DNA of 64,000 bases, from contig JBLDXI010000003.1 of NCBI GenBank assembly GCA_047495785.1, positions 992,001-1,056,000 on the forward strand, given 5' to 3'. The DNA is from Lepidodermella squamata. Taxonomy: Eukaryota > Animalia > Gastrotricha. The notes beneath the pieces are model-generated. The model saw only the letters and a program-made list of their open reading frames with translations. It had not been told where the DNA came from and did not search any database. Made by a program: the position numbers and the translations under genes. Numbering within the stretch: position 1 is the stretch's first letter; every line of letters begins with the position of its first letter. Of the stretch, positions 16,701-21,893 are shown piece after piece.

Positions 16701-16948
16701 CCGCCAGTTGGGGCTATCCGGACGGCGAAAAAAGGTGAAAAAGTTGAAAAGCTGAAAGGTGAACCCGTATCTTCCTAACGGTCCACTTACTCTCAGGTCA
16801 TGAAATATTTACGGTATGTGGGTCGTCTTTCCACCCAACTCCGTGCAAAATTTCATTGCTAACGGAAGGGTAGTTTTTGAGTCATGCTCATTCTCCTGTT
16901 TGCATGAGCATTCGTCCAAATAGCCCCAATGACTTACCCCGATTACGG
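16701..16948. mobile_element. 248-bp non-autonomous relative of the neighbouring pogo element
   Basis: Left end TA|CCGCCAGTTGGGGCTATCCGGACGGCGAAAAAA matches 17215 onward; 16785-16935 matches 21525-21675; ends TACGG|TA. Confidence 0.85.
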
Positions 16949-17411
16949 TATGCGGGTTTCTGTATTTTTCGAATAGGCCAGTTCAGGGCGGGGAGATGAG
17001 CCACCCCGTAGCAACATTTTGAATATAGATAATTAATTACTAGCTAGTCAGCCCAGGTCCGGGCGGGCCAGCTTTTTTCGTCTTGCTTTTGTCTGCTAAA
17101 AGAATTAATAAAAACGCAGCAACCAATCAAGCCTAATCCAATAAGTACATGGTAGCGGGATAGGCTGCTGTCAGTCGTTTTGGAGCACTACGTTTCAGTT
17201 GTCGCGCTGACATACCGTCACTTGGGGCTATCCGGACGGCGAAAAAAAATTACCCCCTGATTTTTTTGCATTTTTACACGTTTCAGAAGGTCCTGATTCC
17301 AATGGAACCAGGATTCCGAATAGCCCCACGGATGGGGCTATCCGGACAGGTGTGGGGCTATTAGTGATACATAAATACTCATTACAGTTTAAGTTTATAA
17401 GCTGTGAAAAG

Positions 17412-17495
17412 TGGCCGAGTGGTTTATCGCCACTGTCTTGGATGAATGATCACTGGCGAGCCAGTGGTTCAAATCCAGGAAGCTTCACTTTTTTT
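17412..17495 (+). other. tRNA-like Pol III type-2 promoter unit inside the pogo element
   Basis: A box TGGCCGAGTGG (17412-22), B box GGTTCAAATCC (17466-76), T7 run at 17489-95; no clean cloverleaf. Confidence 0.55.
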
Positions 17496-17880
17496 ATAAG
17501 TTTTTTTCCAGCAATTTTTTATTATTATTGTGTGGATTTCCTTCGTCCATCGTTATTTGATCTTAAATATTCCGAATATGTTTACTTTGATATAAATCTA
17601 GGCTCAATTCTCTCGTACTTTCACCGCTACGCGTTTCATCTAACCGAAGTTGAACAGCGCACCTTTGCTTTTAATGCATTATGTGATCGGTACCGGGTTG
17701 ACGGTGACATTTTAAAGAACCAAAAAACAAACTTCAATAATTAATTATAAAATATATTTATTCTCGCGCAGAGAAAGACATTAGGTGAAAAGACATTTGC
17801 AGACGTAATGGCACATATCACACGTGATTAGTATCACATTGGCACTGTTAGTATTGCTCGTATAGTATCACAACAGAAAA

Positions 17881-20344
17881 TCAGGATGGTTTAAAGCGTA
17901 AAAGTTTGCCATCAACGCAATTGATGCGCACCGTCTGGGGCGGTCCTTGCATAGGGAAGCCTTTTTGAATAACTGAGAAGTAATGGTCTGTACCATTGAA
18001 GCCCAAGTGTATCTGTTTCACGTTGCTCAGAGACGACCCAAACGCTGGGAAAACGTGCGTTGTGTGGTAGGTGTGGACCAAAACGTCCACTTGATATACA
18101 CGGGCAAAGGCGACCAAGGTATCGTTATCACCCCATGTGTCTGGATCGTCGCCTTTCCACGTACTCGCCAATTGAAACACTGAAAATATAAGGGCTGGTC
18201 AGTGCAAATTCACATTTATTCGTGGTGAAACAATACCTCGGTTTCCGAAGTCAGCAAGAATGGCCTCGCGATCACCATCGACAGGTAATCCGCCCGCGTC
18301 CATCGTTCCAGCGAACTCGTCCGGGTTGTCAAGCATGTAAGTTAAGACGGCTGTTTTGATTTCTTCAGCTAATTCGAAGTCTCCCTCCAACTGGTGGCTG
18401 AGTGCATAGAATTGGCATCCACTGTAAGAAATAAATTATCGGAATTCCCTCACGTCGCCCTCGTTAATATCTGGCTTACCCGTTACTCGGAACGTCGATA
18501 AGTGTAAGATCGAACGGACTCAGGCGCTTTCGTAACAGCCTTAATCTTTCGAGGCCGTTAGGAATAACCGGCTTACTGCCATTCTCTGGCTTCTTATTAG
18601 GTTTCGGCAAGCTGACAGGAGTAGCGGTAATGGCGATCGGCTGTGAGCTCTTATAAACCCATAGGCTGGCAGGTGTATCTCTCTTGCTGCTTGTGGTAGC
18701 GTTACTGCGAGATTTCGGTCCAGGTTTGCCCTTGGCGGGCCTTCCAGGGCCTCTCTTGCTAATTGGCGTGTCTTGACACAGGTCAATGCTCATAGAGTCT
18801 CCTATATCCTGCAGTGATTGATCGGGGCTTGGCGGGCGCTTACGCTGTTTGACTTTCTCCAGGTCTTCTACGGATATGCTGGTACCTGGCTCGAGGCGCA
18901 CGGCTGTTCCTCTGCCCCTTTTGACAGCCGGCTTGTCGGTTGCCATACATCGCTTCAGATGTTCCAGAATTGCCCGACCCACCTCAGTCTGAGCGAGTTG
19001 TTCCTTAGATTTCGGCAAGTCATAGGTCATAGCTACAGTCAACTTCACACCATCCGAACTAATCTTGACATCAGGAACGAGAACCGCTACGTCTTCAGGT
19101 GACTCACAAGGTAGAATTTCAACATCAGCCAGCGGCTTTACCGGAAGTCGTGATAAAGCCCGACCCATATTGACAGGCCAAATCCCGCATGCATCAAAGC
19201 CGGCGACAATATTTTTCATTCGACCTTTCTTCATGCCCTGGTCATAGGTGACAGCTTTGACTAGCTTGGACAACAGGACAGGAAAATCACATTTTGCTAG
19301 GGATTTTTGCGATCGATTCTCTAGCTTCCAGTTCAGCAGAATTGTCCGCCACTCCTTTTTCAAGGGGCCGAAAAAGGCGACGTCCAGGGGTTGGCAGACA
19401 CTGGTAGCATTAGGCGGCAGCAAAACGAAGCTGATGTCATGGTTTTCACACTCTTCAATGACTTTAAAGGAGATATGGCTCGACAGGTTATCGCCGATCA
19501 GAACCTTTTTTCCAGTACCTGTTTTCAGATAGGGCAACGCCACATTTAGGAACCAATCTTCAAACGTCGGCATCTCGAACCAACCACTTTTACTAATTGA
19601 GAAGCGAGTTTTAGGAGGAGCGCCTTCAGCCCAGCTAGGTCTCAACACTCTTTTACTCCGATAACAGACGTATGTCGGGAGCATCGTCCCATCTGCAGCG
19701 CCGCTAAACATCAGCGAAATGCTACCCTTCGTTGAGTTCAGAATCCTACCCGGTCGCTTTATGCGTCGACGAAACACAAAATGCTTCCGGCCTGGGTCAT
19801 CCGTTAAGTTGGTTTCGTCGTAATTAACGATATAGTGAGGGTCGGCATCTGCCAGCGTTTCGCGTAGGTTAACAAAAAAAGACTCAAGAGTCGTGCGAGA
19901 CAGCTCGGCCTTTGCGGTTGAAATGTTCGAAGCAAATCGTGGCTTAATAGCATCCTTATGTCTTTCGAGAAATGAATAGTACCAGTCGTATCCAGGTTTG
20001 TTATTGTGGAATTCCGACACCTTTATTCCACGCGATTTAAGGTAAGACTCAACCACGCAACGAATGTCATCCCGATTCAACGGGAAACCAAAGTCACCCA
20101 ACATTGACACGTACTTTACCAGGGCTAACTCGACGTCGTCAGCAAGGGCACGCGGATGTCCAGCATAACCGATCTGGGGTGTTCGATAGTGGCGATACAA
20201 GGTGGTTTTTGGTATTCCCGTTTCAGAAGCAACAGAGGCGAATGGCTTCCCATCTTTCAACTGAACCAAAGCGCGTTTTAAGTCAGTCGGCGTGTAATCA
20301 CGACAACTTCGTCGGGTCTTCTTCGCGGTATACTTGCGGACCAT
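17881..20344 (-). CDS. pogo/CENP-B-like transposase (HTH_psq, CENPB HTH, DDE_1, AT-hook-like) fused by splicing to a C-terminal OTU cysteine protease; 782 aa
   Basis: Exons 20344-18480, 18421-18237, 18179-17881. Triad NYDET / GDNLSSH / QPLD with 35-residue spacing. OTU Cys box DVPSNGGCQFYALSHQL, WGD motif, His box HLGFNGTDHYFSV. Confidence 0.88.
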
Positions 20345-20448
20345 GTCAATCGCTTAAATGTCACCAGGCAATTTTTAATAACCCTATTTCCAAAGAAAAA
20401 TTGAATAGACGTAAACATCTCGGACTCGTTATTGCACAGACTCGACCC

Positions 20449-20887
20449 TTAAGCCAACAAGCCGACAACAATTAAAGCAGCTTTTTCAAATTCGCCGTAA
20501 AAGAAAACTATCTCCAAATGGGCTACAACACCCATACCACGTCCGTCGTTGAATCGTTCACCCGTGACCGTAACTTGCATAGGTAGATTCATGTCGATTG
20601 CAGCATGTATCTGAGAAAGGTACTCCCTCCCGACATGACCCAGTGGACGCCGGTCTGTAAGTCTAATTACCTGTAACAGAAAATATAAATGCTTGCATGC
20701 AGTCAATTGTAATGCATCTAACCTTGATCGCTTTTGGATCGTGAACATTATCAGGCTCTTTTTCGAAATAGCAGACATCGCCCGGCAAGCATTTAGCAAC
20801 GAACCTGCTATGCTGCCCCACCAAGAGCGCCTTCGCCTTACCTGTTTTGATAAGCTTGAGGCTTTCCTTAGGACAGGGGGTTAACAT
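20449..20887 (-). CDS. Stand-alone HIRAN-domain protein (128 aa, 2 exons) inside the pogo element
   Basis: Exons 20887-20723 and 20670-20449 (phase 0). Sequence LLVGQH..GDVCYFEKEPDNVHDPKAIKVIRLTDRRPLGHVGRE fits the HIRAN pattern ExxNxxDxxAIxV...GxVP/R. Confidence 0.75.
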
Positions 20888-21893
20888 TTTTCCTAGATGT
20901 TAAAAATGTATCAAATCAAAATCAACGTCGACTTAGTGAATTTATCTGTAAAACTTTGCATTCTTTAAGATACCATCAGAAAATCGTGGTTACTGATAGC
21001 TGAACACATCTAACATTGGTTATAATGACCATTAATAGGTAGCGATACGAACCGTGAAGTGTAACTGTCGCCTGGGCGTCATGCGTGAATAATGCAAGTA
21101 AGCGCAAGCAATCCGCGCTAAGTTCCCTTGCCGGCAGCGTTTAACTCTTAGCGCGTACTGTAATGTGAAAAACAAAATTATTTACAAATAACATAAAAAT
21201 TATTTAATTTCTGTTAATAACATATGAAAAACATAAATATTATATAGTTTATTATTTAGTATTCTCTTCATTAGCCGCATTTTTTGTTCCGATTGCCCCA
21301 CAACCTCATGTTTTCGTGGGGCTAAAAGGACGCAATTAATTAGACAAAAGTATGATTCTGATCGGGCCGTTTTCAATTTTCATGGGTTCCATGGCGTCTA
21401 TAGATTCAGAAAAAATTGGGCGCAGGTCCAGCAATATTCTCTTCGGGTCCAGGTAATTCAACGCAGAACAGTGATTAAACTGAGTTAAACTTACACCTGA
21501 AAGGTAAGCCCATATCTTCACAACCACTTACTCTCAGGTCATGAAATTTTTATGGCATGTGGGTCGTCTTTCCACCTAACTCTGTGCAAAATTTCATTGC
21601 CAACGGCCGGGTAGTTTTTAAGCTATGCTCATTCTCCCGTTTGCATGAACATTTGTCCGAATAGCCCCAATGACCCAGATTACCCCAAATGACGGTACTG
21701 CAGAGGACGATGTTGCCATAGTGAAAGTGGTGCGAATCATGGCGAAATAAGCCGTCCTGTCCCAGCGCATGGACAGGCCTGGGGTCCTGGCTAATCAGCG
21801 GAAAAATGGCATGTTCCGAGAGCAGCGGCGTATTGCTAGATCAACGTGGGATCTAGCCTAGTAGTAGTATTCGCATCTGGCACTACGCCGAGG

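What the first reader, a model, noticed from the sequence alone, without database searches (positions are those of the whole stretch)
17215..21695. Intact pogo transposon pairing an OTU-protease-fused transposase with a separate HIRAN gene
Seen: one TA-flanked TIR element holds two co-oriented spliced genes, a 128-aa HIRAN-like protein and, 104 bp downstream, a DD35D transposase spliced to an OTU domain with intact Cys and His boxes. Known: HIRAN in HLTF/Rad5 binds free 3' DNA ends at stalled forks, where those proteins promote PCNA polyubiquitination; OTU domains are deubiquitinases and occur in some other transposon groups such as Ginger and Helitrons. Inference: the element may encode a kit that binds 3' ends or forks and removes ubiquitin marks, steering targeting or repair of excision breaks. 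I do not recall this pairing in a pogo element.
Basis: partly seen in the sequence, partly recalled or inferred. Interest (0 to 1): 0.9.

Follow-up and report, generated by a model that had tools for sequence, protein, structure and literature searches.

The report
Pogo transposon carrying HIRAN and OTU modules
This is a real, apparently still active cut-and-paste "pogo" jumping gene that carries two unusual extras, a small protein with the DNA-3'-end-binding HIRAN fold and an OTU (deubiquitinase-type) domain spliced onto its transposase; I found this pairing in none of the transposon papers I could search.

Summary
Window 17215-21695 is a 4,481-bp TA-flanked TIR element. On the minus strand it has a 2-exon, 128-aa HIRAN-like gene, a 104-bp spacer, then a 3-exon, 782-aa DD35D pogo transposase whose C-terminus is an OTU domain with Cys and His boxes.

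- **OTU:** exon profiles hit OTUD3 (E 8e-9) and OTUD5 in the PDB.
- **HIRAN:** sequence support is weak (Pfam 14-22 bits, below the cut-off). An AlphaFold model of a paralogue, built with the family alignment, matches only HIRAN structures (Z 7.6-9.3; the next fold scores 4.4).
- **Copies:** this is the only full copy of its type, but at least 40 MITEs of about 930 bp share its ends and TA duplications, some 98-99% alike, so mobilisation was recent.
- **Paralogues:** two diverged elements in the same genome (transposase about 50% identical) keep the same two-gene layout, intron positions and catalytic residues. One of them was already noted by this scan (s1-391705). Synonymous sites are saturated while HIRAN, DDE and OTU dN stays at 0.2-0.6, so the modules look constrained.
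- **Other species:** one distant pogo-like element has the HIRAN gene but no OTU. The closest foreign transposases have neither.

Function is inferred. Two pogo surveys mention neither domain. Repbase and Dfam could not be searched.

The parts
17213..17214 (.). left TA target-site duplication
   Evidence: TA flanks both ends of this copy and of 14 MITE copies
17215..17237 (+). left terminal inverted repeat (CCGTCACTTGGGGCTATCCGGAC)
17215..17425 (.). left end shared with the ~930-bp MITE family (167-211 bp, 90-99% identity); holds subterminal TGGGGCTATCCGGAC-type repeats at 17222, 17315 (inverted) and 17333
17757..17762 (-). AATAAA poly(A) signal about 120 nt after the OTU stop; the only canonical one in the element after either gene
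17881..18179 (-). transposase-OTU exon 3: OTU C-terminal half with the TWGDNDTLVAFAR motif and His box (H749), plus the stop codon
   Evidence: the exon profile hits OTUD3 4bou at E 8.3e-9
18180..18236 (-). intron 2 (57 nt, GT..AG, phase 1)
   Evidence: same position in the C15 and C4 paralogues
18237..18421 (-). transposase-OTU exon 2: OTU catalytic Cys box (C624) and following helix
   Evidence: the exon profile hits OTUD5 at E 1.4e-3 and OTUD1 at 0.013, aligned at the catalytic Cys
18422..18479 (-). intron 1 (58 nt, GT..AG, phase 2), splitting the OTU domain
   Evidence: conserved in the paralogues
18480..20344 (-). transposase-OTU exon 1: N-terminal HTH region, DDE_1 core (D176, D285, D321 = DD35D), variable basic linker with an AT-hook-like RGPGRP motif, and the start of the OTU domain
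20345..20448 (-). 104-bp spacer between the HIRAN stop and the transposase ATG; no AATAAA (one ATTAAA)
   Evidence: spacers of 100-125 bp in the paralogues and in L045
20449..20670 (-). HIRAN-like gene exon 2 (73 aa plus stop)
   Evidence: protein-language-model features of the homologous C15 exon point to HIRAN clusters, score 0.93
20671..20722 (-). HIRAN-like gene intron (52 nt, GT..AG, phase 0, after ...AIK)
   Evidence: same position in C15, C4 and the foreign element L045
20723..20887 (-). HIRAN-like gene exon 1 (55 aa; LLVGQH...EPxNxHDxxAIK motif)
   Evidence: Pfam HIRAN 14-17.5 bits
21292..21695 (.). right end (upstream of the genes; presumed promoter region) shared with the MITE family (404-423 bp, 87-96% identity), with subterminal repeats at 21317 and 21655
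21675..21695 (+). right terminal inverted repeat (...CCCCAAATGACGG)
21696..21697 (.). right TA target-site duplication

Best explanation
This is an autonomous DNA transposon of the pogo superfamily (DD35D, TA target, TIRs with subterminal repeats). Besides its transposase it encodes two accessory modules.

Shown:
- The element's ends, and the gene models as read from the sequence. Splicing has no RNA support; it rests on GT..AG ends, reading phase and conservation in the paralogues.
- The DDE_1 core.
- An OTU-family domain fused through a basic, AT-hook-like linker to the transposase C-terminus.
- A separate upstream 128-aa protein of the HIRAN fold.
- Conservation of this layout in three diverged lineages of the genome.
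- Recent mobilisation of matching MITEs.

Inferred:
- The transposase binds the TIRs and subterminal repeats and does TA-targeted cut-and-paste of the master copy and, in trans, of its MITEs.
- The HIRAN protein binds the free 3'-OH, short single-stranded DNA ends that DDE cleavage creates, at the transposon ends or in the donor gap. In HLTF the HIRAN pocket holds the 3'-terminal dinucleotide and Asp94 reads the 3'-OH.
- The tethered OTU domain removes ubiquitin (or a ubiquitin-like mark) from the transposase itself or from repair or chromatin factors at that site. This would stabilise the transposase or steer how the break is repaired.
- Both genes are probably expressed from one transcription unit. 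There is a single canonical poly(A) signal after the OTU stop, the spacer is 100-125 bp, and a pyrimidine tract plus AG lies just before the transposase ATG in C15, C4 and L045.
For: - Anatomy.
- OTU: exon-3 profile against the PDB gives OTUD3 at E 8.3e-9 with the His box aligned. The exon-2 profile gives OTUD5 at 1.4e-3 and OTUD1 at 0.013, aligned at the catalytic Cys. A profile of the three spliced OTU domains finds the genome's Pfam-verified OTU genes. A deletion derivative at C55 has DDE_1 (E 4.5e-11) and OTU (E 4e-4) in one ORF.
- HIRAN sequence signals: Pfam 17.5 and 14.2 bits on exon 1 and 21.7 bits over profile positions 20-76 in the C15 paralogue. Language-model features of exon 2 give HIRAN clusters at 0.93, for 85 of 100 hits.
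- HIRAN fold: AF2 model of the contiguous C73 paralogue with the family alignment has pLDDT 68. The Foldseek top 18 are all HIRAN (3k2y, HLTF, Rad5) at probability 0.96-1.0, followed by a sharp drop. VIA-align gives Z 7.6-9.3 over 93-100 residues, against 4.4 for the next fold.
- Conservation: the C15 and C4 elements have the same genes, order, intron positions and TA-flanked TIRs. dN is 0.22-0.60 for HIRAN, 0.24-0.28 for DDE and 0.39-0.46 for OTU, against 0.7-3.9 for the linker, with dS saturated.
- Foreign element: L045 has the HIRAN gene with the same intron site upstream of a distant pogo-like transposase.
- Activity: at least 40 MITEs with TA duplications, with subfamilies 98-99% identical.
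- HIRAN biochemistry: PMC5773155 and PMC4666394.
- OTU in other transposons: PMC2836005.
Against: - No RNA evidence for splicing or expression.
- Pfam HIRAN and OTU scores on exon pieces are below the gathering cut-offs.
- HIRAN profiles find nothing in PDB sequences.
- Language-model features of exon 1 pointed to ASCH at 0.89 rather than HIRAN.
- The HIRAN fold model is of a diverged paralogue with a 54-nt in-frame insert, not of the window protein.
- OTU residues: the position two after the catalytic His is Phe/Tyr, not Asp as in OTUD3. The window copy has Asn where C15 and C4 have Asp at Cys-3. Protease activity is therefore not assured.
- The HLTF-type aromatic pair cannot be mapped with these tools.
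- The closest foreign transposases (L043, L044, L050, L051) transpose, or transposed, without either module, so neither is needed for basic pogo chemistry.
Confidence: 0.55

Rival explanations
1. The OTU domain is chiefly a processing protease, or a catalytically dead ubiquitin binder, rather than a deubiquitinase acting on host targets. It could cut itself off the transposase, as papain/OTU-like proteases of RNA viruses process polyproteins, or merely dock the transposase on ubiquitinated chromatin.
For: It is covalently tethered by a long, fast-evolving basic linker (dN 0.7-3.9). The acidic residue at His+2 seen in OTUD3 is absent. The window copy has Asn at Cys-3 where the paralogues have Asp.
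Against: Cys and His are invariant in three lineages with saturated synonymous divergence, which argues for retained catalysis. OTU domains in Ginger1 transposases and Helitron proteins show the same C-terminal arrangement and have been discussed as ubiquitin-pathway modules (PMC2836005).
Confidence: 0.15
2. The HIRAN protein is a self-regulator, or an inhibitor of rival elements. By capping 3'-OH transposon ends it would limit strand transfer or copy number, rather than helping transposition or repair.
For: Each of the three lineages persists as a single full-length master copy among dozens of MITEs. The HIRAN gene is the first cistron. In L045 against the window element it is more conserved (37-45% identity) than the transposase (24-31%).
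Against: No direct evidence. MITE subfamilies at 98-99% identity show that mobilisation goes on in its presence. One master copy plus many MITEs is also common for elements without such a gene.
Confidence: 0.15
3. The HIRAN and OTU sequences are passengers: host gene fragments captured by the transposon, with no role in its life cycle.
For: The nearest foreign pogo relatives lack both. DNA transposons are known to capture host fragments (general knowledge).
Against: Both are complete domains with their own start or in-phase splicing. They are kept open, with conserved motifs and intron positions, in three lineages whose synonymous sites are saturated. The HIRAN gene recurs in a far more distant element from another sample. 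The Pfam HIRAN search of this genome found no host parent gene.
Confidence: 0.08
4. The gene models are wrong: the OTU exons form a separate downstream gene or a pseudogene, and there is no fusion protein.
For: No transcript evidence.
Against: The OTU fold starts inside the transposase ORF. Exon 2 begins in phase with no upstream ATG. GT..AG introns of 52-67 nt lie at identical positions and phases in three paralogues. The C55 deletion derivative carries DDE_1 and OTU in one ORF.
Confidence: 0.05

Closest known systems
pogo superfamily DNA transposons with a DD35D triad (Passer-type groups; groups 33-40 of Dupeyron et al. 2020, PMC7325037; Gao et al. 2020, PMC7386202)
   Same: DDE_1 catalytic core, DD35D spacing, TA target duplication, TIRs and MITE derivatives. 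The best database relatives, at 37-47% identity, are pogo/Tigger/jerky-like proteins of arthropods, molluscs and tunicates.
   Different: Described pogo elements encode a transposase only; neither survey mentions OTU or HIRAN. Here there is a second gene, and a C-terminal OTU domain reached by splicing. I did not place the element in a named pogo family, because no reference sequences were at hand.
Ginger1 transposases and animal Helitron proteins with C-terminal OTU domains (Bao, Kapitonov and Jurka 2010, PMC2836005)
   Same: An OTU-like cysteine protease domain fused to the C-terminus of the element's main enzyme. The same idea of a link between transposition and the ubiquitin pathway.
   Different: A different transposase superfamily (Gypsy-integrase-like, or Rep/helicase), different target duplications, and no HIRAN partner gene.
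HIRAN domains of HLTF and Rad5, and the bacterial stand-alone HIRAN protein lp_0118 (PDB 4s0n, 4xzf, 6l8n, 3k2y)
   Same: The fold (Z 7.6-9.3). A stand-alone size like the bacterial proteins. An invariant N-x-H-D...AIKV motif in the region that gets the Pfam HIRAN hit.
   Different: Not fused to a SNF2 or RING module. Sequence similarity is below the Pfam cut-off and undetectable against PDB sequences. It is encoded by a transposon. From memory only, the GxRYY aromatic motif of HLTF appears replaced by GQH.
Lemi1/Emigrant (pogo-like element and its MITE in Arabidopsis, PMC1636448)
   Same: A pogo-type master element whose TIRs and subterminal repeats are shared with a MITE family that it is thought to mobilise.
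   Different: No accessory HIRAN or OTU modules are reported there. I read only the title and abstract.

Membership tests
pogo superfamily (IS630-Tc1-mariner group) | DDE_1-type catalytic domain | tested here: met
   Pfam PF03184 at E 6.1e-17, 62 bits, against a cut-off of 22
pogo superfamily (IS630-Tc1-mariner group) | DDD triad with about 29-56 residues between the second and third Asp | tested here: met
   D176, D285 and D321 give DD35D, invariant in the three paralogues; range from PMC7386202
pogo superfamily (IS630-Tc1-mariner group) | TA target-site duplication and terminal inverted repeats | tested here: met
   15 of 15 copies examined are TA-flanked; 23-nt TIR at 83% complementarity plus subterminal repeats
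pogo superfamily (IS630-Tc1-mariner group) | N-terminal CENP-B/psq-type HTH DNA-binding domain | tested here: inconclusive
   HTH_psq reaches only E 0.11 in the window protein; most homologues carry PF05225
OTU cysteine proteases (Pfam PF02338; OTUD subfamily) | Significant profile match | tested here: met
   Exon profiles against the PDB give OTUD3 at 8.3e-9, OTUD5 at 1.4e-3 and OTUD1 at 0.013. Pfam itself is below its cut-off or silent on single exons. The spliced protein could not be submitted by reference.
OTU cysteine proteases (Pfam PF02338; OTUD subfamily) | Catalytic Cys and His in their conserved boxes | tested here: met
   C624 in GGCQFYALSHQL and H749 in TDHYFSV, invariant in three paralogues and aligned to the OTUD5 Cys and OTUD3 His boxes
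OTU cysteine proteases (Pfam PF02338; OTUD subfamily) | Third (acidic or Asn) triad residue | tested here: inconclusive
   His+2 is Phe/Tyr where OTUD3 has Asp. Asp at His-1 is invariant. Asp at Cys-3 is present in C15 and C4 but is Asn in the window copy.
OTU cysteine proteases (Pfam PF02338; OTUD subfamily) | Deubiquitinase activity | not testable with these tools
   Needs Ub-AMC or di-ubiquitin assays
HIRAN domain (Pfam PF08797) | Profile match above the curated cut-off (24.7 bits) | tested here: inconclusive
   17.5 and 14.2 bits on the window's exon 1; 21.7 bits across both exons of the C15 paralogue, read through its intron; nothing for exon 2 alone or for the C73 copy. The spliced protein has no reference and was not submitted.
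HIRAN domain (Pfam PF08797) | Beta-barrel-with-helices HIRAN fold | tested here: met
   AF2 model of the C73 paralogue with the family alignment (pLDDT 68). The Foldseek top 18 are all HIRAN. VIA-align Z is 7.6-9.3, rmsd 3.0-3.9 over 93-100 residues, with the next fold at Z 4.4. The model is of a paralogue, not of the window protein itself.
HIRAN domain (Pfam PF08797) | 3'-OH-reading Asp and base-stacking aromatic residues (HLTF D94, Y72, Y93; PMC5773155, PMC4666394) | tested here: inconclusive
   An invariant N-x-H-D just before AIKV lies in the stretch that Pfam aligns to HIRAN positions 18-44. Residue-by-residue equivalence to HLTF could not be computed.
HIRAN domain (Pfam PF08797) | Binding of free 3' DNA ends | not testable with these tools
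   Needs EMSA or fluorescence anisotropy with 3'-OH against 3'-phosphate substrates
Ginger1 / Helitron OTU-bearing transposons | Gypsy-integrase-like transposase (Ginger1) or Rep/helicase protein (Helitron) | tested here: not met
   The enzyme here is DDE_1/pogo with a TA duplication; it resembles these elements only in carrying an OTU domain

The most novel reading that the evidence does not exclude
The HIRAN protein is a transposon-encoded chaperone for 3' DNA ends, and it works together with the transposase-tethered OTU deubiquitinase. It would hold the 3'-OH ends made by DDE cleavage while the OTU strips ubiquitin from PCNA, histones or the transposase. The element would thus carry its own counterpart of the HLTF/Rad5 damage-tolerance switch, run in reverse, to control the repair or timing of transposition. 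This would be a new class of accessory function for cut-and-paste transposons, older than this genome, since a distant pogo-like element in another organism also has the HIRAN gene.
Probability: 0.2. Interest if true: 0.85.

Novelty: new variant of a known kind. Interest (0 to 1): 0.62.

Why it matters
Eukaryotic cut-and-paste transposons of the Tc1/mariner-pogo group are textbook one-gene elements. How they deal with the DNA ends and gaps they create is left to host repair.

This is a pogo lineage that has kept two accessory modules through long divergence: a 3'-end-binding fold and a ubiquitin-protease domain. It points to transposon-encoded control of end handling or ubiquitin signalling.

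It also looks experimentally tractable. There is one intact master copy of 4.5 kb, and its natural MITE substrates include subfamilies whose copies are 98-99% identical.

The finding extends the known occurrence of OTU domains in transposons (Ginger1, Helitrons) to a third, unrelated superfamily, so recruitment appears recurrent. As far as I could search, it is the first HIRAN domain linked to a transposable element.

Tried and rejected
- **Word-indexed protein searches.** The HIRAN exon 1 search found no candidates. The OTU exon-3 alignment, limited to proteins of 54-171 aa, found none. These are blind to longer or spliced relatives.
- **Metagenome scans.** The HIRAN exon-1 profile gave nothing. 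The OTU exon-3 profile gave only an unrelated GC-rich protist-like OTU protein, L046.
- **Phage tblastn** with HIRAN exon 2 gave only chance hits at E of 1 or more.
- **PDB sequence searches** with HIRAN profiles A1 and A5 and with the C73 ORF gave no HIRAN hit.
- **Pfam** on the C73 HIRAN-like ORF, on exon 2 of the HIRAN gene and on OTU exon 3 gave nothing useful.
- **Top 120 transposase homologues** have no OTU-like or HIRAN-like segment. Four foreign loci (L043, L044, L050, L051) have neither module nearby; two of those contigs are only about 2 kb.
- **RNA evidence.** Only one non-RNA run holds the element. Contigs of the probable source sample would add nothing.
- **tRNA-like stretch at about 17405-17495.** Neither ARAGORN nor Rfam recognises it, and it is not repeated in the genome.
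- **dN/dS proper** could not be computed because dS is saturated. I used the contrast between the domains and the linker instead.
- **Left out on purpose.** The spliced 128-aa and 782-aa proteins were not submitted to Pfam, PDB, structure or complex prediction.
- **Nested or composite origin** of the HIRAN gene was considered and rejected. There are no extra TIRs or duplications around it, and the same order and spacing occur in four elements.

Full report
**1. What is in the window**

The stretch 17215-21695 is bounded by inverted termini, CCGTCACTTGGGG... on the left and ...CCCCAAATGACGG on the right. Each terminus abuts a TA. Subterminal copies of a TGGGGCTATCCGGAC-like motif occur in both orientations near both ends.

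All coding capacity is on the minus strand. I read the junctions by eye and then assembled them by script. This gives two genes.

- **HIRAN-like gene.** Exons 20723-20887 and 20449-20670, separated by a 52-nt GT..AG intron in phase 0, encoding 128 aa.
- **Transposase-OTU gene.** It starts 104 bp after the HIRAN stop. Exons are 18480-20344, 18237-18421 and 17881-18179, with GT..AG introns of 58 and 57 nt, encoding 782 aa.

- The big exon carries Pfam DDE_1 (E 6e-17).
- The catalytic residues are D176, D285 and D321, i.e. DD35D.
- The last ~180 residues carry an OTU Cys box (C624) and His box (H749).
- The first strand of that domain (LRKRLxPFDLxLxxVP) lies in the transposase exon, before the splice donor. 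The OTU domain therefore cannot be made without the predicted splice.

**2. Is it a real mobile element?**

A DNA search of the window's own 121-Mb assembly finds this copy as the only full-length one. It also finds at least 40 short derivatives of about 930 bp. They share the left 167-211 bp and the right 404-423 bp at 87-99% identity.

Fourteen of these, extracted with their flanks, all have the same termini and TA on both sides in unrelated flanking DNA. Some subfamilies are 98-99% identical between loci. The TA duplication and the TIRs are therefore functional features, and a matching transposase has acted recently. A decayed, internally deleted MITE lies 280 bp to the left, at 16701-16933.

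**3.

*OTU: yes.*

- A profile of exon 3 from the three paralogues hits human OTUD3 (4bou) at E 8.3e-9, with the His box aligned.
- The exon-2 profile hits OTUD5 (1.4e-3) and OTUD1 (0.013), aligned at the catalytic Cys.
- A profile of the spliced domains retrieves this genome's Pfam-verified OTU genes.
- An internally deleted relative at C55 has DDE_1 and OTU in one ORF by Pfam.
- Pfam's own model is insensitive to the single exons.

Two cautions apply. The residue two after the catalytic His is Phe/Tyr, where OTUD3 has Asp. The window copy has Asn, while the two paralogues have Asp, three residues before the Cys.

*HIRAN: probable, and by fold rather than by sequence.*

- Pfam gives 17.5 and 14.2 bits on exon 1.
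- Pfam gives 21.7 bits across both exons of the C15 paralogue. All of these are under the 24.7-bit cut-off.
- PDB sequence searches find nothing.
- Language-model features of exon 2 point to HIRAN clusters, at 0.93 for 85 of 100 hits. Those of exon 1 point weakly to ASCH, at 0.89.

The decisive evidence came from a fourth, diverged HIRAN-like ORF at C73. It is contiguous because its 54-nt insert, or GC-AG intron, is in frame. I folded it with an alignment of all the family's exon peptides. The model has pLDDT 68 and pTM 0.59.

- Foldseek's first 18 PDB hits are all HIRAN: lp_0118 (3k2y), six HLTF entries and K. lactis Rad5, at probability 0.96-1.0. Probability then drops to 0.13.
- VIA-align gives Z 7.6-9.3 over 93-100 residues. 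The next fold scores Z 4.4.

The model is of a paralogue, not of the window protein, and I say so in the membership table.

**4.

A protein search of the genome finds two diverged paralogous elements.

- C15:2697166-2701581 is 4,416 bp and intact.
- C4:1071795-1076483 is 4,689 bp. It has one frameshift in the linker and a nested young repeat.

Both are TA-flanked with CCGT(C/A)A.TTGGGGC termini. Both carry, in the same order and orientation, a HIRAN-like gene, a spacer of 121-124 bp, and a transposase-OTU gene. The introns lie at the same codon positions.

Transposase identity to the window copy is about 50-57% and HIRAN identity about 40-48%. Synonymous sites are saturated. dN values are:

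| Region | dN |
|---|---|
| HIRAN | 0.22-0.60 |
| DDE core | 0.24-0.28 |
| OTU | 0.39-0.46 |
| Linker | 0.7-3.9 |

Both modules have therefore been under purifying selection since the lineages split.

Each lineage is one master copy with its own MITE family. Decayed transposase-OTU remnants elsewhere, at C54, C59, C25 and C15:3.53 Mb, show a longer history in this genome.

**5. Beyond this genome**

The 120 best transposase homologues in the 5.8-billion-protein collection are 36-47% identical and come from arthropods, molluscs and tunicates. None carries an OTU-like or HIRAN-like segment.

In a tree, the three paralogues form a clade with support 1.0. Their sisters are P0044 and P0055. The P0055 contig shows the same ...CCCCAAACGACGG/TA terminus but only a transposase. 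Two further loci with long flanks also lack both modules.

An exhaustive profile search of 1.84 billion representatives with HIRAN exon 1 found one true hit, P0121 (E 1.3e-5). Its 4.8-kb contig (L045) carries the following:

- A two-exon HIRAN-like gene, with the intron at the same AIK|V site.
- A pogo-like transposase 100 bp downstream that is only 24-35% identical and ends in an AT-hook.
- No OTU.

So the HIRAN-pogo pairing is older or more mobile than the OTU fusion. The HIRAN protein (37-45% identity) is better conserved than the transposase across that distance.

**6. Expression architecture (inference)**

The only canonical AATAAA lies about 120 nt after the OTU stop. The spacer between the genes has none. 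In C15, C4 and L045 a pyrimidine tract plus AG sits just upstream of the transposase ATG. One transcription unit with alternative or trans-splicing is the simplest reading. No RNA run holds the element, so this is untested.

**7. Mechanism**

*Shown:* a pogo DD35D transposase with TA targeting; mobilised MITEs; a tethered OTU-family domain with Cys and His; a stand-alone HIRAN-fold protein; long-term constraint on both.

*Established elsewhere:* the HLTF HIRAN pocket binds the single-stranded 3'-terminal dinucleotide, with D94 reading the 3'-OH and Y72 and Y93 stacking on the bases (PMC5773155, PMC4666394). OTU domains are C-terminal additions in Ginger1 transposases and occur in animal Helitron proteins. 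There they were proposed to link transposition to ubiquitin-regulated repair (PMC2836005).

*Inferred:* DDE cleavage leaves 3'-OH ends, and from general knowledge Tc1/mariner-type excision leaves short 3' overhangs. The HIRAN protein is well suited to hold these at the transposon ends or in the donor gap. The OTU domain, brought there by the transposase, would remove ubiquitin from the transposase or from repair or chromatin factors. The rivals are a processing or inactive OTU, HIRAN as a self-limiter, passenger genes, and wrong gene models. They are weighed in their own sections.

**8. Novelty**

OTU-transposase fusions are known in other superfamilies, so that half is a new instance of a known theme. 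I found no report of OTU or HIRAN in pogo elements in two dedicated surveys. Full-text searches found no paper linking HIRAN to any transposon; the 'HIRAN' hits were other words beginning with those letters, I presume surnames such as Hirano. Repbase and Dfam could not be consulted. I rate it a new variant of a known kind, of solid interest to transposon biologists, with function unproven.

Noticed in passing
window 16701-16933: A decayed, internally deleted copy of the same MITE family (MITE positions 1-33 plus about 735-912, 84-97% identity), lying 280 bp to the left of the autonomous element.
   Followed up: partly
window about 17405-17495 (3' UTR of the transposase-OTU gene): A tRNA-like stretch (GTGGCCGAGTGGTT... 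GGTTCAAATCC, followed by a run of T). ARAGORN and Rfam do not call it, and it is unique in the genome.
   Followed up: partly
L047:3713-4605 (G000:C73:259712-260605): A fourth, diverged HIRAN-like ORF of 135 aa, contiguous, with a 54-nt in-frame insert or GC-AG intron at a different position. It directly follows and overlaps a truncated Tigger-like ORF with HTH_Tnp_Tc5 (E 6e-11). It may be a chimeric or rearranged pogo-HIRAN gene.
   Followed up: partly
L037:3561-5444 (G000:C13, about 4.5256 Mb) and L038:3670-5634 (G000:C10, about 2.2592 Mb): Two related ORFs of 628 and 655 aa with no Pfam transposase hit, ending in AT-hook motifs plus an OTU Cys box; the OTU continues in a downstream exon. 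They look like another repeat or transposon family with the same linker-plus-OTU module. Their OTU scores better against the pogo-OTU profile than the host OTU genes do.
   Followed up: partly
L035:5508-6071 (G000:C55, about 822.5-823.1 kb): An internally deleted relative in which DDE_1 (E 4.5e-11) runs straight into the OTU Cys box (E 4e-4) in a single 188-aa ORF.
   Followed up: yes
L034:4045-4517 (positions 250-722 of the C4 element): A roughly 475-bp repeat nested in the 3' part of the C4 paralogue, with at least 15 copies 97-100% identical elsewhere in the genome. This is a very young short element of another family.
   Followed up: no
L045 (Logan contig SRR21620664_320696, 4,786 bp): A complete-looking foreign pogo-like element, with subterminal CCCTAATTTGGGAA / TTCCCAAATTAGG inverted motifs near both contig ends. 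It carries the HIRAN-like gene but no OTU, and its transposase has its own intron and ends in an AT-hook. The source organism is unknown.
   Followed up: partly
G000:C15 and many contigs: The C15 paralogue has its own, older MITE family of about 1 kb (30 or more copies, ends 80-89% identical). An internal segment (element positions 143-332) also occurs inverted within the MITEs.
   Followed up: no
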